Notes under the pieces: generated by a model
The model's database searches: none
Told to the model about the DNA's origin: nothing
The model's input: the letters and a program-made list of their open reading frames with translations, nothing else
Translations under genes and position numbers: made by a program
Source of the DNA: Octopus sinensis
Taxonomy: Eukaryota
Direction: 5' to 3'
Assembly: GCF_006345805.1 (NCBI RefSeq)
Contig: NC_043012.1
Coordinates: forward strand, 15,562,001-15,626,000
DNA: 64,000 bases
Shown: positions 1,298-37,330 of the stretch, in pieces
Numbering within the stretch: position 1 is the first letter of the stretch
Layout of the letters: each line of letters opens with the position of its first letter

Positions 1298-4200
1298 ATG
1301 TCTGGGAAATATTCTAATAAGGATATTTTTCAGAATGCTTCTAGTCCTGATGAAATGTTTTCTAAATGCAACATGGCTTCTTCCGATGCGGTTGACTTAA
1401 TTGCTGATGTAAGCAATCAGACATTTCAGTCTGAAAAACCTTATAAGTGTAGCTACTGTAAAAAATCTTTTACTCAATCTGGCCATTTGACCACACATGT
1501 TCGTACACACACAGGAGACCGGCCATTCCAGTGTCCTTACTGCCCAAAAGCTTTCACTGACCGAGGCAATCTTAACACGCATATTCGTACACATACAGGT
1601 GAGAAACCATTCAAATGTGAATTATGTGAGAAGGCTTTCACATTTCATATTCAATTGAGTCGTCACAAAAAAGTTTGCATGTCCAGGAATACAAATTCCA
1701 CATCAAGTTTTCAGATGGATGAGAAGAACAATAATTATAACACCACCATCGCTGTTGCTAATCAATCTCAATTTAATAATTTTACATCTGATATCAGTCC
1801 TATGCAAAGTGCTCCTTTTAGTGAAAATAGCTTATATTCAGCAGCATCTAGTTTTATCTTAGGTGAGTGTTCTGATGATATGCAACAACCCAGTAATTTG
1901 TTTTTCAGTAAAAATGAAACAAACAGTACAATCTCCAGTTTTCATAATGAACCAGCATCATCAAATAACAGGTACAGTGATACAAAAGATTCCTCTTCCA
2001 TTTGTGGCTCTTCGAAAGATCTACGTGAAATTTCTGCTGACGCAGTTGTGTCCAGTTGTGGTTTGTTAAATACAGAAACTTACGATTTGTATAAGTCTGA
2101 GGATGAATCCTTGCCATACACAAATGTCTCAAAACAGGAGAAACATAAATTCCAGCCCCAAACCAATAGTATATATGTAACTGCTAATATGACTAACGCT
2201 GGTTTTAATAGTCAACAGATTGAAGAAAGTGGAACTAGCTCCATACAGAAAAATGCTTGTCTCTCTGAAAATATCAAGTATGATAAAATTATTTATATTG
2301 ATTCTGATTCACCTAATGGCACTTCTGAAGAAGTTAAATCCACTTTTGATGCTAACACAGCGCCAGAAAATGAAGTTCCTTCATCCAATCCTTCAGATCT
2401 TCTAAGTAGGAGCGACAAGACAACGACTGACATGAGGAACAAAGAGGATTTAATTAATAGCAACACAATTTCAAAGAAACCTGTCCATCGAAAATCTATT
2501 TTTTGTGATGTATGCAAAAAGACTTTCCATCATTCTTACCAGTTAGTAATACACTTGAATTCTCATAATTGCCAAAGAAATTTCGAGTGCAAATTTTGTG
2601 GCAAAACATTCCAGCAAGTTGCTCGTCTCAATTCTCATTTACACACACACACTGGCGCCAAACCTTATAAATGTTCATTTTGTGGTAAAGGGTTTGCTGA
2701 TCGGAGCAACCTTAAGTCTCATCGTCGTCTTCACACAGGTGAAAAGCCATTTAAATGTACATTGTGTTTTCAAGAGTTCACATTTCACATCCAACTTAAT
2801 CGCCACAAACGTAATTGCAAAGCAGCTGAGCCTGTTGTATTGGAGAGCAACACATCATTTAGTAGTTCTGATAATAATAATAATAATAATAATGATGTTG
2901 ATACATTACTACCAACCATCTCAATGCCATCCCATGTTTACAACATTAACAATAGCGGTACCAGTTACAGTATCCAACTTAATCCAGATTTCATAAAAAA
3001 CTGTGATAATTCCAAAACTCTTAATAGCTCAGTGAATTCTTCCTGTGAAGTAGATTCTACTTTAAATCAATCAGATTTGATAGAGTCTGGTAGCAAAGAT
3101 AACATTGTTGATCTTACTGATGAAACACCGGATGATAGTACTGATGAGCAAAATATCTGTTTGAAACCCTGGAAAACTACTGATAGAAACCTTTTATCCA
3201 GGTTGTCTACATTCGATGGTAAACTTCAAGATAATACTTCTAACCAACAGATAGAGTTCCCATCAGAGTTTTCTAAAGACTGCTTAAGGCAATGTCACAT
3301 TGACTTGTCTGAGGATTATGATAACGACCTGACGCCTACTACCAATTGCAATAGTAATACCTCTGACTATAGTTCTTTGTCTTCGGGATCAAAATCAGAG
3401 GAAGCTTTGTTAACTTGCCAATATTGTTACAAGTCATTTTCTAAGAAGGATGACTTAGACAAACATTGTAAGAAAAGCCATAACAAATTTCCTTTAGAAA
3501 CCTTCAAAGTGAAAGCCAATTTGAGCAACATGAAAAAGCCTTATACTTGCAAATTTTGTCCCAAATCATTTCTACAGCCTAGTCATTTAAATGCCCATAT
3601 TAGGACTCACACTGGAGATAAACCTTTCACTTGTCAGTTTTGTAATAAGGCTTTCTCCAATCAAAGCAATCTTAACACTCATATGAGGCTGCACACTAAA
3701 GTGAAACCCTTCAAATGCCTTAGCTGTAACCAGTCCTTTATGTTTCACATTCAGTTGCAACGGCATAAAATCAAATGCTTTGGCAACAAGAACCTCTCCA
3801 TACAATATCCATCCAAAGAGAGAATATCAACTATTTCACTTATCTCTCAAGCAGACAAACTTTCCAGTTTTGAACAAAGTGGAACAGAATTAAGAAACAA
3901 AGAGTCAAGACACTTCATCTCATCCGTTAAAGATGTCAATGGTTCTTCAGACAGTTGTTATATGGAAAACCCTTCAAACGCTACATTATCTCTTCAGGTT
4001 AACACAGCCAACAAAACAGTAACGACAAATGATTGTGAAACACATTACGGCAATTCTTTGAGTCTTGGTGTAATGGAAGAGAATCAAGTGGAAGCTGCTG
4101 CTGATGTTGGTGAAACTAAAGAAAATGTAGCAGAAATCAAAGAAGAATGGAAAAAACACAATATGCCGATGAGAACTGAAATAAATCAGTCTGATACAGC

Positions 4201-7200
4201 TGATTCATTACCAAGAAGTAAGTCTACTACTGAAGAGTTAACGCTTACTGAAAAATCCATTGTAGAATCTACACCGATAGATGGGTCTTTAGAACTGCCT
4301 GATAAAAATCAAATTCCTTTGCAGTCGAATTTGCTGAGTTATCATCCTGGGAAAAAGTTATTTCGTTGTAAATATTGCAAAAGGAATTTTCTTGGACTTT
4401 ATCTACTGTCGGTGCATCTGCGATCCCACAACTTCGCAACGAGTGAGAAAATGTTTGAATGTGCTTTATGTAAAAAGTCTTTTCAGAAGGCTGGCCAGCT
4501 TAATAGCCATGTACGTACGCACACGGGAGTCAAGCCATTTTTGTGTCAGTATTGTGGGAAAGCCTTTGCTGACCGTAGTAACTTGAATACTCACAGGAGA
4601 ACTCACACTGGGGAAAAACCATTTAAATGTTTATTTTGTGGAAAGGCTTTTACATTTCATATCCAGCTTAGTAGACATAAAAGAGTCTGTAAGCCTTCAG
4701 CATTAGCACAGTTACATCATCAATATCAGAAACGAACTAATTCTTTGCAAATTCCTCTTCAAAATACTGTAGAACAAACTAATTTGGCAAATAATTCCAG
4801 TGTTTCAAAGAAACTTGGCCAATCTGGAGATATATTTTTCAGTGACAAAACAACTGATCACATACTCAACAGTAATGAAATCCATTTTGAGGATCCTTTA
4901 TCAGTTCAGGTTTACAATAACCAAGCTGAATCAACAATGCCTTATAGTACCACTAGTCTACAGGAAGAAGCTGAATTACTGGATTGTAACAACAGAGCTG
5001 TTACTGGCAGAAAGTCAGACAATTTGCTCCTTCCAAGACCTGGTAACAGTTTAGAACAGGTTGAACAAAAGCCAAATTTTAATTATCAGGATGCATCCTC
5101 TAGAAAAGCTGTGGAATTAAAAGCTATCTCTACTCAACAGAACTTAACAGAAAATCAATGTAATCCAGATGTATATAGCAATAATGATCCAGAAAATGAT
5201 ATCATAAAATCATCCCGATTTTCTGAAGACCAAGATTCTATAAATAATTCTTTGTCAACTTTTGCATGTAACAAAATATCAGGGACCGCTAACAAAAACT
5301 ATTGCAATGATAATGTTTCCCGAATGAGTTCCTTAACACAATCTGGAGAGGAAGCCAGTTCTTTTGTGAAACCAGGCATATTTTGCAATGATGATGACAA
5401 TGTTGAAATGAGATCCAATGTCTCATCATACACTCAAAGAAGCAACGAGAGTTTGGCCGCAAATAGCAGTTTGTTTCCTTGTTGTTACTGTAGTAAGGTT
5501 TTCAAACTAGTGACTACACTAGCAGTTCATATCAGATTACATACAGGAAGTAAAGTATACGAGTGTGAATTTTGTGGTGAAACTTTTTACCGATTTACAG
5601 ACTTAGCAGTTCACTTGAAGCTTCATCCCCAAGAAATATTGTTTCAGTGCGAATATTGTGATATGACGTTTTCACGTGATTGTCATTTGCGACTCCATGA
5701 AAAGAGCCACTTGTTAAAGGATGGAGTGCTTCAGGAGAGCCTAGCTCAGAAAACCTTGAAGCAGAAATTAAATAATGACAATAATTTCATTTGCCCTATA
5801 TGTTATTGTATGTTTCCCAGCAGTTTTACTTTAGACAACCATTTAACGACTCACACAACTGGGAAATTATATCGGTGCCAAACATGCAAACAAGCTTTTA
5901 CATTTCCTCAGCCTTTCAAAAGGCACATTCAAGAATGCCAACAATTATTGAAAGATCAAGAATCTACTTTTATCCTGGAGCCAATTTCAACCCAGAACTC
6001 TCAGCCATTTTCCTCCCAAAATGTCTTCAGAAAGGATTTGTTGGCTAATAAGACTTCTCGAGAACAGCCACAACCTGTTGGTTTATTTTCAAATACTGGA
6101 AGACTCTCCTCTTTAGCAATGGAATTATGGAAGCTGCCTCCCAATCTTGAGACCATAAACCAGCATAAAAAGCAATTCACAGACAATAACGGTTCAGTTC
6201 TCTTAGCTCCTTCAGAACTTGATGGTAATGAAAACTTAGTGTGTAATTATTGTGAACGTAAATTTTCTTCTTGCAAATCACTTAGTTTACATCTTAAAAC
6301 GCATAATGCAAATTTTAGCACCAAGAAAGTGCATCGTTGTGAATTTTGTATGAAACTCTTTTTCCAGCAGTTGTTACTTGATAAACATAAAAGAACTCAT
6401 CATAACCAAAAGTCGTATAATTTAAAGCGAGAAAGTCTTAAATGTCGATTCTGTGCAAAGACATTTCAACAGTCGAGCCACCTGAAAGCTCATATTCGAC
6501 ACCATACAGGTGACAAGCCTTTCAAGTGCCAATACTGTGGTAAAGCTTTCTCTGATCGCAGTAATTTGAATACTCACATCCGTACACACACAGGAGAAAA
6601 ACCATTCAAATGTACCAAATGTAGGTGTGCATTTACATTTCACATCCAGTTGACACGGCATAAAAGAATTTGTCAGAACCCCAGAGATGAGGCAAACTCA
6701 GCTACAGTCTCTGGAGATAGACAACAACACGAGGAATCTAGATTATCTCAGGCAACAAATTCCTTTAACCATTGTTTCCCAGAATCAACATCAAGTTGTA
6801 GTATTCCTGATGTAGCAAACGAACATTCTGAAAATAGAAATCTTGAAAGTAATTTAAGAATTCCGTTGTCCCCTTTGTTTTTCAGTAGTAATATTTTAGA
6901 AGATAATAACTTAAATCAACCAAGAATTTTGACTTCATCCAATTCAACAGAGCAGCTTGCTTCAAAGCTACCAGAGACATCATCCAAATGTGATTCCAGA
7001 TTATCTGACAGAGTTTCAACTACAAAAAGTAGCAGTCATTCTCCGACTAACCTTCATTCAAATCATTATAACACTGAAACCGATGTTTTGGATTGCAAAC
7101 CTATCATTGAAGTAGATGCTAATATTTATTTGCAACCCACGGTCAGTATAAAATCTGAACCTTTTCCCCCAGATGAACAACTTTTAGTTTGTCCACCTGA

Positions 7201-7651
7201 GATCACTTCTAACATCTCTAACATACCATTTAATGTGAATACAGATAAAATGTTTAATGATACGAGAAATACTTCAGAGTTGGAGAAATTTCCAGATTGT
7301 GCTAAAGAAGAAGATTTGAAACCAGATATTGTATCGGTAGATTATGTTAAATGTCAAGAGGATGAGATTGGTAAAAGACAAATTTCTACAATGGATTCTG
7401 TTCAAGTGGAAGAAAATCCACTTTCAATAAATAATTCATTTTCAGACCCAAATCATTCCACATGCAGTAGTGCAGCTAATAAGTCTTTTGAACATGTGGA
7501 AGATGTTTCTAATACAAATGAGAATGAGAACTCTTCTGGTAAACCTCTTCACAGTTCTACTGCAGTTGATTGTCTATTTGGTAGTGATGTGACTATTCCA
7601 GATAAAGATAACACACATTCTTTGAAACCAAACCACTTAGATGAAACATAA
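1298..7651 (+). CDS. Multi-cluster C2H2/C2HC zinc-finger protein, 2117 aa, single coding exon
   Basis: 6.35-kb open frame with an in-frame TAA at 1280 upstream. 25 CxxC...H/C fingers, many joined by TGEKP-type linkers, in clusters at 1448-1678, 2504-2818, 3416-3778, 4367-4690, 5480-5938 and 6242-6673. S/N-rich spacers separate the clusters. Confidence 0.96.
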   Translation: MSGKYSNKDIFQNASSPDEMFSKCNMASSDAVDLIADVSNQTFQSEKPYKCSYCKKSFTQSGHLTTHVRTHTGDRPFQCPYCPKAFTDRGNLNTHIRTHTGEKPFKCELCEKAFTFHIQLSRHKKVCMSRNTNSTSSFQMDEKNNNYNTTIAVANQSQFNNFTSDISPMQSAPFSENSLYSAASSFILGECSDDMQQPSNLFFSKNETNSTISSFHNEPASSNNRYSDTKDSSSICGSSKDLREISADAVVSSCGLLNTETYDLYKSEDESLPYTNVSKQEKHKFQPQTNSIYVTANMTNAGFNSQQIEESGTSSIQKNACLSENIKYDKIIYIDSDSPNGTSEEVKSTFDANTAPENEVPSSNPSDLLSRSDKTTTDMRNKEDLINSNTISKKPVHRKSIFCDVCKKTFHHSYQLVIHLNSHNCQRNFECKFCGKTFQQVARLNSHLHTHTGAKPYKCSFCGKGFADRSNLKSHRRLHTGEKPFKCTLCFQEFTFHIQLNRHKRNCKAAEPVVLESNTSFSSSDNNNNNNNDVDTLLPTISMPSHVYNINNSGTSYSIQLNPDFIKNCDNSKTLNSSVNSSCEVDSTLNQSDLIESGSKDNIVDLTDETPDDSTDEQNICLKPWKTTDRNLLSRLSTFDGKLQDNTSNQQIEFPSEFSKDCLRQCHIDLSEDYDNDLTPTTNCNSNTSDYSSLSSGSKSEEALLTCQYCYKSFSKKDDLDKHCKKSHNKFPLETFKVKANLSNMKKPYTCKFCPKSFLQPSHLNAHIRTHTGDKPFTCQFCNKAFSNQSNLNTHMRLHTKVKPFKCLSCNQSFMFHIQLQRHKIKCFGNKNLSIQYPSKERISTISLISQADKLSSFEQSGTELRNKESRHFISSVKDVNGSSDSCYMENPSNATLSLQVNTANKTVTTNDCETHYGNSLSLGVMEENQVEAAADVGETKENVAEIKEEWKKHNMPMRTEINQSDTADSLPRSKSTTEELTLTEKSIVESTPIDGSLELPDKNQIPLQSNLLSYHPGKKLFRCKYCKRNFLGLYLLSVHLRSHNFATSEKMFECALCKKSFQKAGQLNSHVRTHTGVKPFLCQYCGKAFADRSNLNTHRRTHTGEKPFKCLFCGKAFTFHIQLSRHKRVCKPSALAQLHHQYQKRTNSLQIPLQNTVEQTNLANNSSVSKKLGQSGDIFFSDKTTDHILNSNEIHFEDPLSVQVYNNQAESTMPYSTTSLQEEAELLDCNNRAVTGRKSDNLLLPRPGNSLEQVEQKPNFNYQDASSRKAVELKAISTQQNLTENQCNPDVYSNNDPENDIIKSSRFSEDQDSINNSLSTFACNKISGTANKNYCNDNVSRMSSLTQSGEEASSFVKPGIFCNDDDNVEMRSNVSSYTQRSNESLAANSSLFPCCYCSKVFKLVTTLAVHIRLHTGSKVYECEFCGETFYRFTDLAVHLKLHPQEILFQCEYCDMTFSRDCHLRLHEKSHLLKDGVLQESLAQKTLKQKLNNDNNFICPICYCMFPSSFTLDNHLTTHTTGKLYRCQTCKQAFTFPQPFKRHIQECQQLLKDQESTFILEPISTQNSQPFSSQNVFRKDLLANKTSREQPQPVGLFSNTGRLSSLAMELWKLPPNLETINQHKKQFTDNNGSVLLAPSELDGNENLVCNYCERKFSSCKSLSLHLKTHNANFSTKKVHRCEFCMKLFFQQLLLDKHKRTHHNQKSYNLKRESLKCRFCAKTFQQSSHLKAHIRHHTGDKPFKCQYCGKAFSDRSNLNTHIRTHTGEKPFKCTKCRCAFTFHIQLTRHKRICQNPRDEANSATVSGDRQQHEESRLSQATNSFNHCFPESTSSCSIPDVANEHSENRNLESNLRIPLSPLFFSSNILEDNNLNQPRILTSSNSTEQLASKLPETSSKCDSRLSDRVSTTKSSSHSPTNLHSNHYNTETDVLDCKPIIEVDANIYLQPTVSIKSEPFPPDEQLLVCPPEITSNISNIPFNVNTDKMFNDTRNTSELEKFPDCAKEEDLKPDIVSVDYVKCQEDEIGKRQISTMDSVQVEENPLSINNSFSDPNHSTCSSAANKSFEHVEDVSNTNENENSSGKPLHSSTAVDCLFGSDVTIPDKDNTHSLKPNHLDET

Positions 7652-11388: not shown

Positions 11389-11419
<31 letters not shown>

Positions 11420-11423
<4 letters not shown>

Positions 11424-11531
11424 GTGTCGGAAAGGGAGGGAGAAAGTGAGTGTGTGTTTGACTGAAAGAGAGAGAGAGAGAGAGAGAGAGGGGTGTTGTC
11501 GGAAAGGGAGGGAGAAAGTGTGTATCACTGT

Positions 11532-11562
<31 letters not shown>

Positions 11563-11668
11563 GTTGTCGGAAAGGGAGGGAGAAAGTGTGTATCACTGTG
11601 AAGAGAGAGAGAGAGAAGAGAGAGAGAGAGGGGTGTTGTCGGAAAGGGAGGGAGAAAGTGTGTATCAC

Positions 11669-11704
<36 letters not shown>

Positions 11705-11881
11705 GTTGTCGGAAAGGGAGGGAGAAAGTGTGTATCACTGTGAGAGAGAGAGAGAGAGAGAGAGAGGGGGGTGTTGTCGGAAAGGGAGGGAGAAAGTGTG
11801 TATCACTGTGAGAGGAGAGAGAGAGAGAGAGAGGAGAGAGAGGGGGTGTTGTCGGAAAGGGAGGGAGAAAGTGTGTATCAC

Positions 11882-11919
<38 letters not shown>

Positions 11920-11953
11920 GTTGTCGGAAAGGGAGGGAGAAAGTGTGTATCAC

Positions 11954-11992
<39 letters not shown>
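11420..11992 (+). repeat. Minisatellite, about 70-bp unit x 8
   Basis: Unit gtgttgtcggaaagggagggagaaagtgtgtatcactgt(ga)n at about 11421 (variant), 11493, 11561, 11635, 11703, 11771, 11846 and 11917. Confidence 0.92.
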
Positions 11993-12199: not shown

Positions 12200-12735
12200 C
12201 CCCCTTTCTCTCTCTCTCTCTCTCAGTCAATCACTCACACTCTCACTCACTAAAAAAAAGATGTAAAAAAAAACTAAATAAATTTTTAAAAATTATGCTA
12301 TCAAATTCCCCCCCCCTCTCTTTCCAACAATGCACACCTCTCTCTCTCTCTCAGTCAATCACTCACACTCTCACTCACTAAAAAAAAGATGTAAAAAAAA
12401 ACTAAATAAATTTTTTTAAATTATGCTATCAATCCCCCCCCTCTCTCTCTTTCCAACAATGCACACCTCTCTCTCTCTCTCAGTCAATCACTCACACTCT
12501 CACTCACTAAAAAAAGATGTAAAAAAAAACTAAATAAATTTTTTTTAAATTATGCTATCAATCTCCCCCCTCTCTCTCTCTTCCAACAATGCACACCTCT
12601 CTCTCTCTCTCAGTCAATCACTCACACTCTCACTCACTAAAAAAAGATGTAAAAAAAAACTAAATAAATTTTTTTAAATTATGCTATCAATCTCCCCCCC
12701 CCTCTCTCTCTCTCCAGTCAATCACTCACTCGAAA
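12200..12735 (+). repeat. Minisatellite, about 129-bp unit x 4 plus a partial copy
   Basis: The anchor cagtcaatcactcac occurs at 12224, 12352, 12481, 12611 and 12715. Confidence 0.9.
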
Positions 12736-16864: not shown

Positions 16865-18146
16865 CGAGGGACGTTCAATAAGTAATGCTTCTGACCCACT
16901 TGCAGTTGATTGATCTAGCTGAAATTTTGCATGTGCAATTATTTATATCTCTATAGATTAAGGGGCAAATTACACCTCTGAACTAATTGTGGTTTCTGAT
17001 CTACAGGTGTTTGAACTGAGTCAAGTGTGAAATGGAGCCAGTTGAGTGTCGAGCAGTGATCCGGTTTTTGTATTTGAAAGGACGCACACCACGGGAGAAT
17101 TTTGATGAAATGAAAGTAACTTATGCTGATGATGCCCCATCATATGACCTTGTAAAACGCTGGCATCATGAATTTAAACATGGTCGGAACTCTGTGGAAA
17201 CAGCTCCCAGATCTGGTCGCCCCCCTTCTGCCACTGATGAGGCATCTGTCCGTCAAGTTGAGGCTGCCATTTTGGAAGATCGACGCATAACTATTCGCCA
17301 AATAGCCCATGAGATCAAGATTAGTACCGGGTCTGTGGAAACTATCATTTATGACCATTTGCATATGCAAAAGGTGTCTGCCAGATGGATTCCCAGGTTG
17401 CTCACACCTTTCCAGAAGCAAGAACGCGTCGAGTGCTCGAGGATGAATTTGGAGATGTGCCAAGAAGATGAGTCAAAATTTTTCAAAAGACTGATTAGAC
17501 AGGATGAAACCTGGGCCCATCACTATAATCCAGAGACCAAAGCCCAGTCAATGCAGTGGAAGCACCGTGACTCACCTCCTCCAGAGAAGGCAAGGGTGCA
17601 GCCCTCCGCTGGCAAGGTCATGCTCACAGTCTTCTGGGACCAGGACGGAGTAGTGATGACAGATTTCCTGGCAAAGAGTACCACAATTACAGGAGCCTAT
17701 TATGCTTCACTTTTGAGGAAATTAAGAGAAGCTATCAAAATCAAGAGGCGGGGCAAGATCAGCTAAGCATCCTCCTCCTGCAGGACAACGCTCCGGTTCA
17801 CAACTCGCGTGTTGCCAGATCAGAAGCACAGGCGTGCGGCTATGAACTCCTCCCCCACCCCCTACTCTCCTGACCTTGCACCCTCTGATTTTCACCTCTT
17901 CCCAGCCATGAAGTTGTTTTTGAAAGGAAAGCATTTCCCATATGATGCAGCCTTGATTTCTGAAGTCACGTCGTGGTTGGAGGACCAAGCTGGGGTCTTC
18001 TACAAAAACGGTCTCCAGAGCTGCATCAAACGATGGGAGAAATGCGTAACTCTGGGTGGTTCCTATGTAAAAAAAGACTAATAACTGTGCCAAGTTTCGT
18101 TGCTCTACTGCTATGGGAAGTGGGTCAGGGGCATTACTTATTGAAC
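16865..18146 (+). mobile_element. Mariner (DD34D) transposon, near full length, frameshifted
   Basis: Left end TA|CGAGGGACGTTCAATAAGTAATGC; the right TIR remnant GCATTACTTATTGAAC is at 18131-18146. The transposase starts at 17032 and contains WIPRLL, QDETW, QDNAPVH and YSPDLAPSDFHLF, with two frameshifts near 17765 and 17860. Confidence 0.95.
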
Positions 18147-18300: not shown

Positions 18301-19438
18301 TACAGGACACCCCAAATAAGCGTAGAACACAACGAGAAACGAAAACATAAAATCAAACAAGGAAACGGACTTTTTTTAACAACGAAAAAACAGAGTACAG
18401 GACAAACAATACCAGGAAAATTACCTTTCATCAGCTGCCTCTGGTTCGACTCAATGCGTGTTAAACAATTCGTTGTTAAAAAAAGTCCGTTTCCTTGTTT
18501 GATTTTATGTTTTCGTTTCTCGTTGTGTTCTACGTTTATTTGTGGTGTCTTGTACTCATATATATATATATATAATATTCCAACCCATGCTAGCATGGAG
18601 AACGGACGTTAAACGATGATGATGATGATGATATATATATATATATGCATGTCTATATACATGTAGATGTAAGTATGTACATATATGTATGTATATATGC
18701 ATATATTTTATTTATTTATTATATTGTTATTATATGACCGAATGCACGCGTGATTTCTCTATTCTCTTCTCCAAGTAAGTTTTTATTTGAATAATCATGA
18801 CGCGCACTCTTACTCTTTACTTGACTTTTCCTCCCTGCCTGTCTGTCTTCCTCTCTACTTGTCTCTCTCCTTATTTCTCACCCTTTCTGGTTTCTTTTCT
18901 CCTCTCTCTCTCCCCTCCTCCTCTCTCAGGCAGTTGATCAGAGGGCTACTAAAAACTTTCTTTCAGCTTCGTGCTTCAACAAGCATACATCGACTTCCCT
19001 GTCTTTCGCAAGCCGATTTTTCACATGCGTTCTAACTAATTTTTCCACCGTCTAAACCTAAAAAAAGCCCTTATTGTTGGTTCCCTGTCCTGTTATTCTT
19101 TATTTGTACTGTTTTTTTCATCATTTGTATTGCTTTTACGTCCTGTTCTTGTCACTTGTTTTACCCCTCTGCAAAAGAATTTTACTTAATTCCTTTTGCA
19201 GATAGGATTTCTTCGGTCTGGCCGTGTTCTGCCCTTACCTTCGAAACATGCATTGAGTCGAACCAGAGGCAGCTGATGAAGGGGAATTTTCCTTGTATTG
19301 TTTGTCCTGTACTCTGTTTTTTCGTTGTTAAAAAAAGTCCGTTTCCTTGTTTTTTTGTTGTTAAAAAAAGTCCGTTTCCTTGTTTGATTTTATGTTTTCG
19401 TTTCTTGTTGTGTTCTACGTTTATTTGGGGTGTCCTGT

Positions 19439-19470
<32 letters not shown>

Positions 19471-21478
19471 TATATATATATATGAGTACAGGACACCCCA
19501 AATAAGCGTAGAACACAACGAGAAACGAAAACATAAAATCAAACAAGGAAACGGACTTTTTTTAACAACGAAAAAACAGAGTACAGGACAAACAATACCA
19601 GGAAAATTACCTTTCATCAGCTGCCTCTGGTTCGACTCAATGCGTGTTAAACAATTCGTTGTTAAAAAAAGTCCGTTTCCTTGTTTGATTTTATGTTTTC
19701 GTTTCTCGTTGTGTTCTACGTTTATTTGTGGTGTCTTGTACTCATATATATATATATATATATATTCCAACCCATGCTAGCATGGAGAACGGACGTTAAA
19801 CGATGATGATGATGATGATATATATATATATATGCATGTCTATATACATGTAGATGTAAGTATGTACATATATGTATGTATATATGCATATATTTTATTT
19901 ATTTATTATATTGTTATTATATGACCGAATGCACGCGTGATTTCTCTATTTCTCTTCTCCAAGTAAGTTTTTATTTGAATAATCATGACGCGCACTCTTA
20001 CTCTTTACTTGACTTTTCCTCCCTGCCTGTCTGTCTTCCTCTCTACTTGTCTCTCTCCTTATTTCTCACCCTTTCTGGTTTCTTTTCTCCTCTCTCTCTC
20101 CCCTCCTCCTCTCTCAGGCAGTTGATCAGAGGGCTACTAAAAACTTTCTTTCAGCTTCGTGCTTCAACAAGCATACATCGACTTCCCTGTCTTTCGCAAG
20201 CCGATTTTTCACATGCGTTCTAACTAATTTTTCCACCGTCTAAACCTAAAAAAAGCCCTTATTGTTGGTTCCCTGTCCTGTTATTCTTTATTTGTACTGT
20301 TTTTTTCATCATTTGTATTGCTTTTACGTCCTGTTCTTGTCACTTGTTTTACCCCTCTGCAAAAGAATTTTACTTAATTCCTTTTGCAGATAGGATTTCT
20401 TCGGTCTGGCCGTGTTCTGCCCTTACCTTCGAAACATGCATTGAGTCGAACCAGAGGCAGCTGATGAAGGGGAATTTTCCTTGTATTGTTTGTCCTGTAC
20501 TCTGTTTTTTCGTTGTTAAAAAAAGTCCGTTCCTTGTTTGATTTTATGTTTTCGTTTCTCGTTGTGTTCTACGTTTATTTGTGGTGTCTTGTACTCATAT
20601 ATATATATATATATATATTCCAACCCATGCTAGCATGGAGAACGGACGTTAAACGATGATGATGATGATGATATATATATATATATGCATGTCTATATAC
20701 ATGTAGATGTAAGTATGTACATATATGTATGTATATATGCATATATTTTATTTATTTATTATATTGTTATTATATGACCGAATGCACGCGTGATTTCTCT
20801 ATTTCTCTTCTCCAAGTAAGTTTTTATTTGAATAATCATGACGCGCACTCTTACTCTTTACTTGACTTTTCCTCCCTGCCTGTCTGTCTTCCTCTCTACT
20901 TGTCTCTCTCCTTATTTCTCACCCTTTCTGGTTTCTTTTCTCCTCTCTCTCTCCCCTCCTCCTCTCTCAGGCAGTTGATCAGAGGGCTACTAAAAACTTC
21001 TTTCAGCTTCGTGCTTCAACAAGCATACATCGACTTCCCTGTCTTTCGCAAGCCGATTTTTCACATGCGTTCTAACTAATTTTTCCACCGTCTAAACCTA
21101 AAAAAAGCCCTTATTGTTGGTTCCCTGTCCTGTTATTCTTTATTTGTACTGTTTTTTTCATCATTTGTATTGCTTTTACGTCCTGTTCTTGTCACTTGTT
21201 TTACCCCTCTGCAAAAGAATTTTACTTAATTCCTTTTGCAGATAGGATTTCTTCGGTCTGGCCGTGTTCTGCCCTTACCTTCGAAACATGCATTGAGTCG
21301 AACCAGAGGCAGCTGATGAAGGGGAATTTTCCTTGTATTGTTTGTCCTGTACTCTGTTTTTTCGTTGTTAAAAAAAGTCCGTTTCCTTGTTTTTTTGTTG
21401 TTAAAAAAAGTCCGTTTCCTTGTTTGATTTTATGTTTTCGTTTCTTGTTGTGTTCTACGTTTATTTGGGGTGTCCTGT

Positions 21479-29782: not shown

Positions 29783-30852
29783 GAGTCGGACGGTTTGACT
29801 GAGGGCTGGTGAGCCGGAAGGCTGCACCAGGCTCCAATCTGATCTGGCAAAGTTTCTACAACTGGATGCCCTTCCTAAATCCAACCACTCCAAGGGTGTA
29901 GTGGGTGCTTTTATGTGCCACCGGCACAAGGGCCAGAGTCGGACGGTTTGACTGAGGGCTGGTGAGCCGGAAGGCTGCACCAGGCTCCAATCTGATCTGG
30001 CAAAGTTTCTACAACTGGATGCCCTTCCTAAATCCAACCACTCCAAGGGTGTAGTGGGTGCTTTTATGTGCCACCGGCACAAGGGCCAGAGTCGGACGGT
30101 TTGACTGAGGGCTGGTGAGCCGGAAGGCTGCACCAGGCTCCAATCTGATCTGGCAAAGTTTCTACAACTGGATGCCCTTCCTAAATCCAACAACTCCAAG
30201 GGTGTAGTGGGTGCTTTTATGTGCCACCGGCACAAGGGCCAGAGTCGGACGGTTTGACTGAGGGCTGGTGAGCCGGAAGGCTGCACCAGGCTCCAATCTG
30301 ATCTGGCAAAGTTTCTACAACTGGATGCCCTCCTAAATCCAACCACTCCAAGGGTGTTGGGTGCTTTTATGTGCCACCGGCACAAGGGCCAGAGTCGGGA
30401 ACGGTTTGACTGAGGGCTGGTGAGCCGGAAGGCTGCACCAGGCTCCAATCTGATCTGGCAAAGTTTCTACAACTGGATGCCCTTCCTAAATTCAACCACT
30501 CCAAGGGTGTAGTGGGTGCTTTTTATTGCCACACCGGCACAAGGGCCAGAGTCGGACGGTTTGACTGAGGGCTGGTGAGCCGGAAGGCTGCACCAGGCTC
30601 CAATCTGATCTGGCAAATTTCTACAACTGGATGCCCTTCCTAAATCCAACCACTCCAAGGTGTAGTGGGTGCTTTTATGTGCCACCGGCACAAGGGCCAG
30701 AGTCGGACGGTTTGACTGAGGGCTGGTGAGCCGGAAGGCTGCACCAGGCTCCAATCTGATCTGGCAAAGTTTCTACAACTGGATGCCCTTCCTAAATCCA
30801 ACCACTCCAAGAGTGTAGTGGGTGCTTTTATGTGCCACCGGCACAAGGGCCA
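29783..30852. repeat. Satellite of 7 x about 153 bp derived from an RTE-tail/SINE segment
   Basis: gagtcggacgg starts at 29783, 29936, 30089, 30242, 30392, 30549 and 30700. Confidence 0.95.
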
Positions 30853-31064
30853 GTCAAGTGGTACCGACTAAAGCTTTGTGATTGATTTTGGTAGGCAGAA
30901 GTTAGTGCTGCATGTGTATATGTGTGTGTGTGTAGGTGCTTGTGCCTCTCCGAGAGAGAGAGAGAGAGGTGGGGACTATATGATTGGGAAACAAGTTTCT
31001 TACCACGCAGTCACACTTACCCTACCAACATGTCTGCACGCACACACACACATCTCAAAAACGT

Positions 31065-31135
31065 ATATATTTATATACATATATATATATATTTATATAT
31101 ATATACATATATATATATATTTATATATATATATT

Positions 31136-31200
<65 letters not shown>

Positions 31201-31299
31201 TTATATATATATACATATATATATATATATTTATATATATACATATATATATATATTTATATATATTATAATATATATATATACATATATATATATATT

Positions 31300-31330
<31 letters not shown>

Positions 31331-31366
31331 TTATATATTATATATATATACATATATATATATATT

Positions 31367-31397
<31 letters not shown>

Positions 31398-31526
31398 TTA
31401 TATATATATATACATATATATATATATTTATATATTATATATACATATATATATATTTATATATATATATAATATACATATATATATATATTTATATATA
31501 TATATATACATATATATATTATTTAT
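31065..31526. repeat. Long interrupted (TA)n microsatellite
   Basis: Read directly from the sequence. Confidence 0.95.
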
Positions 31527-32219
31527 ATTGTGTCGGTGGCACATAAAAACACCATCCGAAGACCCGGGCAAGACTAGTCAGGCCATAAACCATGCCCCTA
31601 CCTGGGACGTAGTCAGTCCACCTGTGCATACCTTCCTTCTTGTGACACTTGTGAAGAACCTGTTGAGGCAAGTGAAATCAATCAAAACAAATCAAAATAG
31701 ATGAACATCAATGGAATTTGTATCTTTGTGGTACCAGTGCCGGTGGCACGTGCACACAATAAAACCATCCGAACGTGGCCGTAGCCAGTACCGCATCGAC
31801 TGGCCTCCGTGCTGTGGCACGTAACAAGCACCATCCGATCGGGCCGTTTGCCAGCCTCATCTGGCACCTGTGTCGGTGGCACATAAAAACACCATCCGAG
31901 CGTGGCCGTCTGCCAGCCTCGTCTGGCACCTGTGTCGGTGGCACATAAAAACACCATCCGAGCGTGCCGTTTGCCAGCCTCGTCTGGCAACCTGTGTCGG
32001 TGGCACATAAAAACCCCTACACTCTCGGAGTGGTTGGCGTTAGGAAGGGCATCCAGCTGTAGAAACACTGCCAGATCTGACTGGACTGGGCAGCTTTTCG
32101 GGCTCCCCAGACCCCAGTTGAACCGTCCAACCCAGCTAGCATGGAAAGCGGACGTTAATGATGATGATGATGATACATATATAATATATATATATATATA
32201 TATATACATATCTATAATT

Positions 32220-32250
<31 letters not shown>

Positions 32251-32269
32251 TTATATATATATATATTTA

Positions 32270-32302
<33 letters not shown>

Positions 32303-32303
32303 T

Positions 32304-32336
<33 letters not shown>

Positions 32337-32856
32337 TTATATATATATATATACTATATATATATATAATTTATATATATAATACATATACACACACATA
32401 TATAAATATGACAGAGCGGCTAACCGGCTTCCGTGCCAGTGGAACTTAAAGGGCACCATTTGAGCGTGATCGTTACCAACGTTGCATTACTGGCACTCAA
32501 GCCCCGTGCTAGTAGGGTATTAAGAGCACCATCTGAGCGTGATTGTTGCCAGAGCGGCTATCTGGCCTCCATGCCGGTGGCACGTAAAAGACACCATTCG
32601 AGTGTGGTCGTTACCAGCATCACCTTACTGGCACCTGTGCTGGTGGCTTGTGTAAAAGATTTGAGCGATGTCGTTGCCTATGCCGCCTGACTGGCCCCAT
32701 GCCGGTGGCACATAAAAGCACCCACTACACTCTCGGAGTGGTTGGCATTAGGAAGGGCATCCAGCTGTAGAAACTCTGCCAGATCAAGATTGAAGCCTCA
32801 GTCATTCGTCCATCCCATGCTAGCATGGAAATCAGACGTTAAACGATGATGATGAT
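31527..32856 (+). mobile_element. Two RTE-tail/SINE copies separated by (TA)n
   Basis: Both end in ccatgctagcatggaaa...(gat)n-like tails (about 32170 and 32855) and share gtggcacataaaa subrepeats. Confidence 0.75.
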
Positions 32857-34989: not shown

Positions 34990-37330
34990 CGGGGTCAGCC
35001 AGGTCGCACTGGCAACACCCACACTCGAATGGTACTTTTTACATACCACTGATGCAGGAGCCAGTCAGGCGGCACTGGCATTGACCATGACAATGATTCC
35101 GCTTGACCCAACAAGTCTTCTCAAGCACAGCATATTGCCTGATGATTAAAGGGTACTTTTAAATGGGCCAATTATGTGACACTGGCATTGGTTGCAGATA
35201 CAGTCTCACTTGGCTTGCCGGGACTTCCCAAACACTGCATATCTCCAAAGATCTCGGTCACTTGTCATTACTTCTGTGAGGCTCAATGTTTGAAGGTTGT
35301 GCTTCATCCCAAGTATTCCTGAGTCTACTTCTTCCACAAGTTCCGTCCACTGTTTGGGTGTGACACTTCTTCACGCAGCTGTCTTCATCCATAGGCAATA
35401 CATGACCATACCAGCGCAGTTGTCTTTCTTGCACACCACATCTGATACTTCTTTCTCTCAGGGCACTTACACTCTGCCGTGTATGCACACTGACATTACA
35501 CATCCAACAGAGCACACTAGCTTCATTTCTTTCAAGCCTATGCAAGTCCTCAGCAGTCATAGCCCATGTTTCACTGCTGTATAACATGGCTGTTTGCACA
35601 CATACATCATATTGTCTACCTTTCACTCTGAGTGAGAAGCCCTTTCTTACCAGCAGAGGTAGGAGCTCTCTGAACTTTGACCAGGCTCTTCTTATTCTAG
35701 AAGCTGTGCTCTCAGAGCATCCACCCCTGCTACTGACTTGGTTACCTAGGTAATGGAAGCTATCAACTATTTCTAGTTTTTCCTCCTGGCATGTGATGGA
35801 ATCTGTTTTCTGTACATCTTTGGTGTTTATTGTCCCTGTGCATCTGCCACACACAAAAACTATCTTCCCAGTTAACCTTCCTTTGATATTACTGTACCTT
35901 TTATATGTCCATAGCTTACACTGGGTACATCTTATGGAGTGTCTATCTACACTTTTTCTGCAGATTGAGCAGGGCTCTCTACCTGAAGGGATTTGTAATT
36001 TGTCTGCCTTACTGCTTACTAAGACTTTGGTTTTTGCTAGATTCACTCTAAGATCCTTTGATTCTAGACCTTGCTTCCACATCTGAAACTTCTCCTCTAG
36101 TTCTGGTAGTGACTCAGCTATAAGAGCATGATCATAAGCATAGAGGAGCTCCCAGGGGCAGCCTGTCTTGAATTCCTCTGTTATTGCCTGGAGGACTATG
36201 ATAAATAAGAGGAGGTTGAGGACTGAGCCATGGTGAACCCTTACTTCTACCTGGAACATAGTTGTTGCCAACCCTTGCCTTACTGACAGCATCCCTGTAT
36301 ATGGCTTGTACAACTCACACCAACCACTCATCTATCCTTAGTTTCAGCTTTGACCACCAGATAAGAGATCAGGGGACCCTGTCAAAGGCTTTTTCCATGT
36401 CATTGAAAGCCAAATACAGAGGTTTCTCTTTGGCTAGGAATTTTTCCTGCACCTGTCTTACCAGAAATATAGCATCAGTGGTGCTTCTCCCTGGCAAAAA
36501 CCCAAACTGCATCTTGTCTAAACTAACTTTCTCCCTAATTAGTTGGGCTATGACCCTTTCCGTGATTTTCATCACCTGGTCCAACAATTTGATATCTCTA
36601 ATTATTCCTATCTAATGCATCACCTTTACCATTATAGCAGTTGACTATAATATTGCTACACCAGTCATTGGGTATGACTCCTTCATGTACCACCTGGTTG
36701 ACTAGACTATAGCCTACACCACCAGATGTTGTAAGCATCTCTGCAGTGACTCCTGATGGACTGGAGGCTTTCCCTGTCTTCATACCTTTAATTGCTTTAT
36801 TTACCAAGGTACTATCAATTCGAATAGCTGGTCCCTCTGTTGGGTCGACAATTGACAGACTCTCTTTCTTCCATTCATTCTCTTCATTTAGCAATCTTTC
36901 ATAGTAGCATCTCCAAGTCTCTTTCTTTGCAACATCATTGAATGCAAGTGAGCCATCCTCCATACAGACGCATTACTCTCCTATGACATCACAATTCTCT
37001 CTCATAGTCTTGCAGTACAAAATACTTCAAATCCTTCTTGATGCAGAACATTGGCTAATTTTTTCTTATCTGCTTCCCATCTGGCTAAGTAAATCTGTCC
37101 CTTAGGTTCCCTTCTGTCACTCTGATACTGTTCCCTGCTACCACTGCACTTTCAGTCCTTCCATGCCCGTTTCTTTTCCCTAATGGCCCTTTCAACTACA
37201 TGTTGCACCAACATGTTACCTAAGGTCAAAAGGGGACTTTACACCAGCCACAGATCTGGTTGGTAGCCCTCAACAGATTGTCCTGTAGGAGCTTCCAGTT
37301 GTCCTCCACATACAATACTATATCCTCTTT
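34990..37330 (-). mobile_element. RTE-clade LINE, 5'-truncated, degraded reverse transcriptase
   Basis: ORF pieces contain FGFLPGRSTTDAIF, DMEKAFDRVP, HGSVLNLLLF, LLYAYD (decayed YADD) and LRWYGHV. Further fragments lie at about 39410-39630 and 40180-40520. Confidence 0.92.

What the first reader, a model, noticed from the sequence alone, without database searches (positions are those of the whole stretch)
1298..7651. Zinc-finger protein built from five spaced copies of one 3-finger cassette
Seen: recognition helices repeat as QSGHLTT/DRGNLNT/FHIQLSR, QVARLNS/DRSNLKS/FHIQLNR, QPSHLNA/NQSNLNT/FHIQLQR, KAGQLNS/DRSNLNT/FHIQLSR and QSSHLKA/DRSNLNT/FHIQLTR. Dissimilar S/N-rich linkers of about 100-275 aa separate the clusters. 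Established: octopus C2H2 genes are greatly expanded, typically as long contiguous finger arrays. Inference: conserved helices with diverged linkers suggest a multivalent binder of one repeated motif, roughly G-n-n-n-A-C-n-G-A by the standard code. It might bridge distant sites or read tandem or TE repeats.
Basis: partly seen in the sequence, partly recalled or inferred. Interest (0 to 1): 0.75.

Follow-up and report, generated by a model that had tools for sequence, protein, structure and literature searches.

The report
Octopus zinc-finger gene with repeated cassettes
This is a real, conserved Octopus gene for a very long zinc-finger protein carrying five old copies of one three-finger DNA-reading module on floppy linkers; it is uncharacterised and seen so far only in Octopus, but similar layouts occur in other zinc-finger proteins.

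Summary
Window 1298..7651 (+) is one intact 2117-aa ORF in Octopus sinensis with 25 C2H2-type fingers. Each cassette ends in an unusual C2HC finger, FxFHIQLxRHKxxC.

The copies are old duplicates: synonymous sites between them are saturated. They are under strong purifying selection, with dN/dS 0.026 against O. bimaculoides, versus 0.27 for the linkers.

- An atypical finger lies just upstream of each of cassettes 2-5, so the repeat unit is really four fingers.
- A five-finger cluster looks like a decayed sixth unit.

Fingers 2 and 3 have (near-)invariant contact residues, but finger 1 differs in two cassettes, so the predicted sites are related rather than identical. No binding data exist.

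The layout is not unique. Other octopod genes, vertebrate ZNF236 and others also carry spaced repeats of their own cassette.

No orthologue was found outside Octopus, and no effector domain was found.

Verdict: an uncharacterised new member of the known multi-cluster C2H2 kind, of modest interest.

The parts
1298..7651 (+). Complete single-exon CDS, 2117 aa plus stop; a C2H2 zinc-finger protein with 25 fingers
   Evidence: Identical gene calls exist in O. sinensis, O. vulgaris and O. bimaculoides.
1430..1696 (+). Cassette 1 (aa 45-133): helices QSGHLTT / DRGNLNT / FHIQLSR, third finger C2HC. No upstream F0 finger.
   Evidence: 157 bits against the cassette profile
2504..2572 (+). F0 finger of unit 2 (aa 403-425, helix HSYQLVI): atypical, joined to F1 by a non-TGEKP linker
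   Evidence: AlphaFold2 pLDDT about 83
2570..2836 (+). Cassette 2 (aa 425-513): QVARLNS / DRSNLKS / FHIQLNR
   Evidence: 150 bits; AlphaFold2 model pLDDT about 90
3416..3481 (+). F0 finger of unit 3 (aa 707-728, helix KKDDLDK)
3530..3796 (+). Cassette 3 (aa 745-833): QPSHLNA / NQSNLNT / FHIQLQR; the most diverged copy
   Evidence: 152 bits
4367..4429 (+). F0 finger of unit 4 (aa 1024-1044, helix GLYLLSV)
4442..4708 (+). Cassette 4 (aa 1049-1137): KAGQLNS / DRSNLNT / FHIQLSR
   Evidence: 156 bits
5480..5938 (+). Five-finger cluster (aa 1395-1547). Its last two fingers (SSFTLDN, FPQPFKR with C2HC ending, 'AFTFPQPFKRHIQEC') align to the F2-F3 part of the cassette, so this is a probable decayed sixth unit.
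   Evidence: 53 and 27 bits; dN/dS 0.18
6242..6403 (+). Two atypical fingers upstream of cassette 5 (aa 1649-1702; helices SCKSLSL, QQLLLDK)
6425..6691 (+). Cassette 5 (aa 1710-1798): QSSHLKA / DRSNLNT / FHIQLTR
   Evidence: 155 bits
6674..7648 (+). C-terminal tail of 325 aa (aa 1793-2117): S/N/P-rich and acidic, with no recognised domain
   Evidence: 93% identical to O. bimaculoides, dN/dS 0.28

Best explanation
This is a single-copy Octopus gene, with its coding sequence in one exon, for a nuclear sequence-specific DNA-binding protein of the multi-cluster C2H2 type.

The protein arose by ancient internal duplication of a four-finger unit. Each unit has a loosely tethered atypical finger F0 followed by a tight F1-F2-F3 cassette with TGEKP-type linkers. 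Five units are intact and one looks decayed.

Each cassette most probably docks in the major groove like Zif268-type arrays. F2 (DRSNLxT) and the invariant C2HC finger F3 (FHIQLxR) would give a shared core, roughly 5'-G-A-n-n-A-C. F1 would add a 3' triplet that is similar in cassettes 1, 2, 3 and 5 (n-G-A) and different in cassette 4.

Long, acidic, S/N-rich, fast-evolving and presumably disordered linkers tether the modules. One molecule could therefore hold several related sites at once (avidity on clustered sites, or bridging), or use different modules at different loci.

What is shown: the anatomy, the age of the duplicates, the selection pattern, the canonical fold and the conservation across three Octopus species. 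What is inferred: DNA binding, the motif and multivalency.
For: - The ORF and finger map are established, with only zinc-finger Pfam families found.
- The cassettes are 49-67% identical in protein, but their third codon positions are only 30-48% identical, so dS is saturated and the duplicates are old.
- Against O. bimaculoides, dN/dS is 0.026 for the cassettes, 0.16 for the other fingers and 0.27 for the linkers, at dS about 0.11-0.14.
- 14 of 15 cassette helices are identical in three species.
- Within-cassette linkers are TGEKP-like: TGDRPFQ, TGEKPFK and so on.
- The AlphaFold2 model of F0 plus cassette 2 shows four beta-beta-alpha fingers, mean pLDDT 81.
- Its best Foldseek and sequence matches are DNA-bound arrays: Aart, PRDM9, ZBTB24, ZFP568, CTCF and 1MEY.
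- Contact residues become more conserved from F1 to F3.
- The linkers are compositionally biased and mutually unrelated.
Against: - There is no binding, localisation or expression data.
- F3 carries F at -1 and I at +2. These are rare (1.9% and 1.8% of 7681 fingers) and are not classic base-reading residues, so F3 may not read bases in the canonical way.
- No canonical NLS-like basic cluster and no known co-regulator motif was found by simple pattern search.
- F1 differs between cassettes, so the modules are not strictly equivalent.
- The excess of the predicted site in the window (38 versus 23 +/- 5.5) is partly due to three copies of one repeat and has no power.
Confidence: 0.55

Rival explanations
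1. This is a division-of-labour scaffold. The cassettes are similar only by descent, and the clusters now do different jobs, as in ZNF423/OAZ, RREB1 or SALL4. Some bind DNA. The invariant hydrophobic-faced C2HC finger F3 and the atypical F0 fingers serve as protein (or RNA) docking modules rather than base readers.
For: - The F3 helix is invariant (F, H, I, Q, L) in all five copies, yet carries rare hydrophobic residues at -1 and +2 and a Cys as last ligand (2.1% of fingers).
- F0 helices are hydrophobic or acidic (GLYLLSV, QQLLLDK, KKDDLDK), and F0 lacks a TGEKP linker to F1.
- F1 specificity residues differ between cassettes.
- From general knowledge, C2HC and other atypical fingers often mediate protein contacts, as in FOG and Ikaros. 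That lead was not tested here.
Against: - F1 and F2 have textbook base-reading helices (QSGHL, DRSNL) and TGEKP linkers.
- F3 keeps R at +6 and Q at +3, which are canonical base contacts.
- The whole cassette is modelled as, and matches, contiguous DNA-bound arrays.
Confidence: 0.25
2. This is a repeat or transposon reader. The protein recognises a motif reiterated in an octopus satellite or TE family and nucleates silencing, like other expanded lineage-specific zinc-finger genes.
For: - Octopus has a large C2H2 expansion, and metazoan ZNF expansions are predicted to target TEs (PMC10547256, PMC12513265).
- Multivalent similar modules would suit reiterated sites.
- No orthologue was found outside Octopus.
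Against: - The helices are almost frozen: dN/dS is 0.026, with one helix change among three species.
- The gene is single-copy and lies outside any tandem ZNF cluster.
- The internal duplicates are ancient.
- No KRAB, FiNZ or other repressor domain is present.
- These features differ from fast-evolving TE-targeting ZNFs.
Confidence: 0.15
3. This is not a functional gene: a chance long ORF, a pseudogene or an annotation artefact.
Against: - A 2117-codon ORF is intact in three species.
- Whole-gene dN/dS is 0.205, and region-specific constraint follows the finger structure.
Confidence: 0.01

Closest known systems
Vertebrate ZNF236 (P0118) and similar uncharacterised 'cassette-repeat' multi-cluster C2H2 proteins, for example P0102, P0300, P0365 and P0050
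   Same: A very long protein in which short clusters of 3-5 fingers, separated by linkers of roughly 70-440 aa in ZNF236 and up to 600 aa in P0102, repeat the same helix series several times. In ZNF236 the series is KPSDLVR-VKSTLTA-TSGSLKV-TSGHRKT and KSxHLKQ-SxGVLKx-TxGSLxR.
   Different: The helices are unrelated. These proteins have no FHIQL finger and no detectable orthology: only generic finger similarity, 22% identity. ZNF236 is conserved in vertebrates, while this gene was seen only in Octopus.
Other octopod spaced-cassette ZNFs: O. bimaculoides LOC106883442 (P0031) with its Argonauta hians orthologue (P0036), O. vulgaris LOC115211127 (P0091), and the O. vulgaris 'Xfin-like' protein P0076
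   Same: Same organismal group, same size range (2276-2780 aa), and the same layout of 5-9 spaced copies of a protein-specific cassette.
   Different: The cassettes differ: xSDLKV-ISRNLTA-QKSALTV-YSxSLxV; SxSALxx-QxAHLDV-QKxNxNR; QxxHLTY-TSSDLKR-QxSNLxx. They have no terminal C2HC FHIQL finger, and there is no significant similarity outside the fingers.
Xenopus Xfin, the name that automated annotation gives this protein
   Same: A Krueppel-type C2H2 poly-finger protein.
   Different: From general knowledge, Xfin is a contiguous array of 37 fingers. Here there are at most 4-5 adjacent fingers with long linkers, and there is no orthology. The name reflects generic finger similarity only.
Characterised multi-cluster zinc-finger regulators: ZNF423/OAZ, RREB1/Hindsight, SALL4, WIZ, Schnurri/HIVEP
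   Same: Finger clusters separated by long, presumably disordered linkers. The clusters act as semi-independent DNA- or protein-binding modules.
   Different: In those proteins the clusters are mostly dissimilar from each other. Here five clusters are paralogous copies with nearly the same contact residues. No sequence relationship exists beyond generic fingers: RREB1 scores only 70 bits with the masked query.
Zif268/EGR-type three-finger DNA-binding domains and designed arrays (Aart, 1MEY)
   Same: A three-finger unit with TGEKP linkers. F1 and F2 helices (QSGHL, DRSNL) are of the type used in engineered fingers. These arrays are the best sequence and fold matches.
   Different: The third finger is C2HC with F at -1 and I at +2, and the unit is reiterated five times in one polypeptide.

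Membership tests
Krueppel-type C2H2 zinc-finger superfamily | C-x2-4-C-x12-H-x3-5-H fingers that match the Pfam zf-C2H2 and zf-H2C2_2 models | tested here: met
   PF13465 at 4.6e-95 and PF00096 at 3.2e-76. The pattern scan finds 25 fingers.
Krueppel-type C2H2 zinc-finger superfamily | TGEKP-like inter-finger linkers within clusters | tested here: met
   The linkers are TGDRPFQ, TGEKPFK, TGAKPYK, TGDKPFT, TGVKPFL and similar.
Krueppel-type C2H2 zinc-finger superfamily | Beta-beta-alpha fold of each finger | tested here: met
   In the AlphaFold2 model, all four fingers of unit 2 are beta-beta-alpha, mean pLDDT 81. This is a prediction, not an experiment.
Effector-domain ZNF families (KRAB, SCAN, BTB/POZ, ZAD, FiNZ, SET/PRDM) | A recognisable N-terminal (or other) effector domain | tested here: not met
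   The Pfam scan of the full protein finds only zinc-finger families. The ORF cannot extend 5' within this exon, because a stop lies 6 codons upstream. An upstream coding exon spliced in is not formally excluded.
Xfin | One long uninterrupted tandem array of fingers, and orthology to Xenopus Xfin | tested here: not met
   The largest cluster has 4 fingers, and there are five long linkers. The only close relatives are Octopus proteins.
ZNF236 family | Orthology or shared cassette helices with ZNF236 | tested here: not met
   ZNF236 (P0118) aligns at 22% identity through generic fingers only. Its cassettes have different helices and no C2HC FHIQL finger.
Fast-evolving TE-targeting ZNF expansions (KZFP-like behaviour) | Tandem gene clusters, many recent paralogues, and rapid change of contact residues | tested here: not met
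   No other ZNF gene lies in the 64-kb window or within 10 kb in three species. No paralogue carries the signature. Cassette dN/dS is 0.026.
Sequence-specific DNA-binding transcription factor (functional class) | Demonstrated binding to a defined DNA motif and nuclear localisation | not testable with these tools
   The only evidence is inference from helices, linkers and structural neighbours.

The most novel reading that the evidence does not exclude
The invariant C2HC 'FHIQL' finger may define a previously undescribed finger subtype. It could read DNA non-canonically, for example through hydrophobic contact with thymine methyls, or recruit a partner. The five-fold, very slowly evolving cassette array on disordered tethers would then make this protein an Octopus-lineage architectural factor that bridges or clusters reiterated sites.
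Probability: 0.1. Interest if true: 0.6.

Novelty: new member of a known kind. Interest (0 to 1): 0.3.

Why it matters
If the five modules bind one shared core motif, the protein would be a natural example of avidity-based or bridging DNA recognition by a single polypeptide. It would sit in a lineage known for a huge and functionally unexplored C2H2 expansion.

The side result may be more useful than this single gene. Long zinc-finger proteins made of spaced repeats of their own cassette recur in octopods and across animals (11 of 259 long ZNFs fetched here), and I found no description of them as a class in the few literature searches run here. As it stands, the gene is an uncharacterised, computationally annotated 'Xfin-like' protein, and nothing about it contradicts what is known of C2H2 proteins.

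Tried and rejected
- **Full-length homology search.** It was swamped by generic poly-finger proteins. Only the Octopus cluster is a true relative.
- **Cassette-profile search through the word index.** It returned only short generic ZNF fragments. The tool appears to restrict targets to about 1.75 times the query length, so the result was uninformative.
- **Exhaustive cassette-profile search of 1.84 billion representatives.** The top 150 are dominated by summed scores of 20-50-finger proteins. None besides the Octopus protein has the signature.
- **Masked query.** Generic fingers 1-2 and homopolymer runs were replaced by X. Only the Octopus cluster and weak generic hits (a gecko ZNF850-like protein, a sea-urchin SET-domain protein, RREB1, ZNF335) came back, so there is no distant orthologue. 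The caveat is that only the 8000 candidates sharing most words were scored.
- **Degenerate DNA pattern for FxFHIQLxRHKxxC across metagenome contigs.** Zero hits.
- **PDB sequence and fold searches.** Only generic DNA-bound arrays were found, with no specific family.
- **Predicted site GANNACNGA in the window.** There were 38 matches versus 23 expected, but this is inflated by three copies of one repeat and has no power. It was rejected as evidence.
- **Motif scan for CtBP (PxDLS), WRPW, EH1 and basic NLS-like clusters.** None was found.
- **Literature.** Only general context on cephalopod C2H2 expansions was found, with nothing on this gene. Its accessions are not in the held supplements of PMC12513265.
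- **Pseudogene or chance-ORF reading.** Rejected on dN/dS and three-species conservation.
Full report
**1. Observation**

The window carries one uninterrupted ORF at 1298..7651 on the + strand. It encodes 2117 aa. An in-frame stop lies six codons upstream of the ATG, and nine codons upstream in O. bimaculoides, so the exon cannot encode more N-terminal sequence.

A C-x2-4-C-x12-H-x3-5-[HC] scan finds 25 fingers. In every triplet the third finger ends in Cys rather than His: FxFHIQLxRHKxxC.

Finger-free spacers measure 276, 200, 197, 264 and 102 aa. They contain 11-20% Ser and 8-13% Asn, are acidic, and share no significant similarity with each other (best E = 0.065).

Pfam sees only zinc-finger families.

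The repetition is far beyond chance:
- Each cassette scores 150-157 bits against the cassette profile, while all other fingers of the protein score 9-53 bits.
- The FHIQL helix occurs in none of 7681 fingers from 376 other zinc-finger proteins fetched.

**2.

There are ten additional fingers.
- An atypical finger, F0, lies just upstream of cassettes 2, 3 and 4. Two such fingers lie upstream of cassette 5.
- F0 helices are HSYQLVI, KKDDLDK, GLYLLSV and QQLLLDK.
- F0 is joined to F1 by irregular linkers of 5-22 aa rather than TGEKP.

The repeat unit is therefore really F0 plus F1-F3.

The cluster at aa 1395-1547 ends in two fingers that align to the F2-F3 part of the cassette: '...TTGKLYRCQTCKQAFTFPQPFKRHIQEC', again C2HC. 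It is most simply read as a decayed sixth unit, which also regularises the spacing of units along the protein.

**3. Age and selection**

Cassettes are 49-67% identical at the protein level. Codon positions 1+2 are 65-75% identical, but third positions are only 30-48% identical. Synonymous divergence is therefore saturated. These are old internal duplicates, not recent DNA repeats or products of ongoing gene conversion.

The window is Octopus sinensis (GCA_006345805.1, CM016874.1, about 15.55 Mb). The same single-exon gene is present in two other species:
- O. vulgaris: CAI9734061, 99% identical.
- O. bimaculoides: XP_014790431, 2111 aa.

Against O. bimaculoides:

| Region | Protein identity | dN/dS |
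|---|---|---|
| Five cassettes | 99.3% | 0.026 |
| Other fingers | not pooled | 0.16 |
| Linkers and tails | 92.5% | 0.27 |

dS is similar throughout, at about 0.10-0.14. Of the 15 cassette helices, 14 are identical in all three species; the one exception is QSSHLKA to QSSHLKS in O. bimaculoides.

The gene is thus functional. The cassettes are its most constrained part, and the linkers are constrained only moderately.

**4. Structure and likely mechanism**

An AlphaFold2 model of unit 2 (F0 plus cassette) gives four canonical beta-beta-alpha fingers. Mean pLDDT is 81, with F1-F3 at about 90. The best matches by sequence and by fold are DNA-bound tandem arrays: Aart, PRDM9, ZBTB24, ZFP568, CTCF and 1MEY. 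Within-cassette linkers are TGEKP-like.

Contact positions (-1, +2, +3, +6) across the five cassettes:

| Finger | -1 | +2 | +3 | +6 |
|---|---|---|---|---|
| F3 | F (invariant) | I (invariant) | Q (invariant) | R (invariant) |
| F2 | D/N | S/G | N | T/S |
| F1 | Q,Q,Q,K,Q | G,A,S,G,S | H,R,H,Q,H | T,S,A,S,A |

With the simple recognition code (established knowledge, an inference here), this gives a shared 5' core of about G-A-n-n-A-C. The 3' triplet would be n-G-A in cassettes 1, 2, 3 and 5 and a different triplet in cassette 4.

F3 is also unusual:
- F at -1 occurs in 1.9% of the 7681 sampled fingers.
- I at +2 occurs in 1.8%.
- A C2HC ending occurs in 2.1%.

Its complete invariance could reflect non-canonical DNA reading or a protein contact.

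My best explanation (confidence 0.55) is a nuclear DNA-binding protein in which five tethered, related modules provide avidity for, or bridging between, related sites. The main rival (0.25) is a division-of-labour scaffold in which F3 and F0 are docking modules.

A TE or satellite reader (0.15) is possible. It fits poorly with the frozen helices, the single-copy state, the isolated location and the lack of a repressor domain.

**5. Relatives and distribution**

Four different search designs found no relative with this cassette outside the three Octopus species:
- the full-length protein;
- the cassette profile against 1.84 billion representatives;
- a query with the generic fingers masked;
- a 45-bit degenerate DNA pattern against metagenome contigs.

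Caveats apply. Generic poly-finger proteins dominate score-ranked lists. The word-index search seems to limit target length. No eukaryotic genome DNA could be searched. Because the internal duplicates are much older than the Octopus species split, orthologues in other octopods are expected, so their absence here is a limit of the tools rather than a finding.

**6. Is the architecture new?**

No. Among 259 long ZNFs fetched, 54 have four or more long linkers. Eleven of these also repeat a finger pair in four or more clusters, and three of the eleven are the Octopus orthologues of this gene.

| Protein | Repeated helix series |
|---|---|
| O. bimaculoides LOC106883442 (P0031) and its Argonauta orthologue (P0036) | xSDLKV-ISRNLTA-QKSALTV-YSxSLxV, about seven times |
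| O. vulgaris LOC115211127 (P0091) | SxSALxx-QxAHLDV-QKxNxNR, about nine times |
| O. vulgaris P0076 | its own cassette (QxxHLTY-TSSDLKR-QxSNLxx) |
| Vertebrate ZNF236 (P0118) | its own cassettes |
| Several unnamed proteins | for example P0102: xxSNLxK-NPSNLTR-xSSNLKx, eight times |

The cited literature describes cephalopod C2H2 expansions and TE-linked ZNF evolution in general terms only (PMC12513265, PMC10547256). It does not mention this gene or this layout.

The database name 'Xfin-like' is a generic similarity label. The defining contiguous array of Xfin is not present.

**7. Verdict**

Conserved helices and diverged linkers are real. A single shared motif and multivalent bridging remain inference. 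The claimed rarity of the layout does not hold.
- The feature is an uncharacterised, apparently lineage-restricted new member of the known multi-cluster C2H2 kind.
- Interest is modest (0.3). It rests mainly on the invariant C2HC FHIQL finger and on the recurring 'spaced own-cassette' layout as a class worth a systematic look.

Noticed in passing
P0031 (O. bimaculoides LOC106883442), P0036 (Argonauta hians LOC115211753), P0033, P0076 and P0091 (O. vulgaris); also P0102, P0300, P0365, P0050 and ZNF236 (P0118): Many very long zinc-finger proteins, several of them octopod, are built of 5-9 spaced copies of their own protein-specific 3-5-finger cassette. The few literature searches run here turned up no description of this layout as a class.
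   Followed up: partly
window 5480-5938 (aa 1395-1547): The last two fingers of the 'separate' five-finger cluster align to F2-F3 of the cassette (AFTFPQPFKRHIQEC, also C2HC). This suggests a decayed sixth repeat unit.
   Followed up: partly
window 17032-17766 (+): A 244-aa ORF matches a mariner/Mos1-type transposase (Pfam Transposase_1 at 1.5e-24, plus HTH_48 and HTH_32). The DDE domain is truncated, so this is a transposon remnant.
   Followed up: partly
window 35258-36331 (-): A 357-aa ORF has a weak reverse-transcriptase match (RVT_1, E = 1.7e-4, below the Pfam cut-off). It is probably a degraded LINE-type retroelement.
   Followed up: partly
window 11391-11987, 12210-12709, 29783-30853, 31064-31528, 32173-32409: Several tandem arrays are present: a GA-rich 70-72-bp unit x 8.4 copies; a 129-bp unit x 3.9; a 153-bp unit x 7 (97% matches); and long (TA)n tracts. 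The long spurious ORFs listed in these regions are artefacts of the repeats.
   Followed up: no
window about 18598-20891: Three copies of a dispersed or tandem element each carry the same pair of predicted-site matches, GAGAACGGA (+) and GAAGACAGA (-), about 245 bp apart. This inflates the motif count in the window.
   Followed up: no
L003 21700-26351 (O. vulgaris locus); the equivalent region would lie roughly 5 kb downstream of the stop codon in the window: In O. vulgaris a TUDOR-domain gene (product 1164 aa or longer) starts about 5.3 kb downstream of the zinc-finger gene on the same strand. No such gene call was listed within 10 kb downstream in the O. sinensis or O. bimaculoides loci.
   Followed up: no
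The search for homologous proteins behaviour: Hits never exceeded about 1.75 times the query length (156 aa for an 89-aa query). The word-index search therefore seems to filter targets by length, which makes short-domain queries blind to long multi-domain relatives.
   Followed up: no
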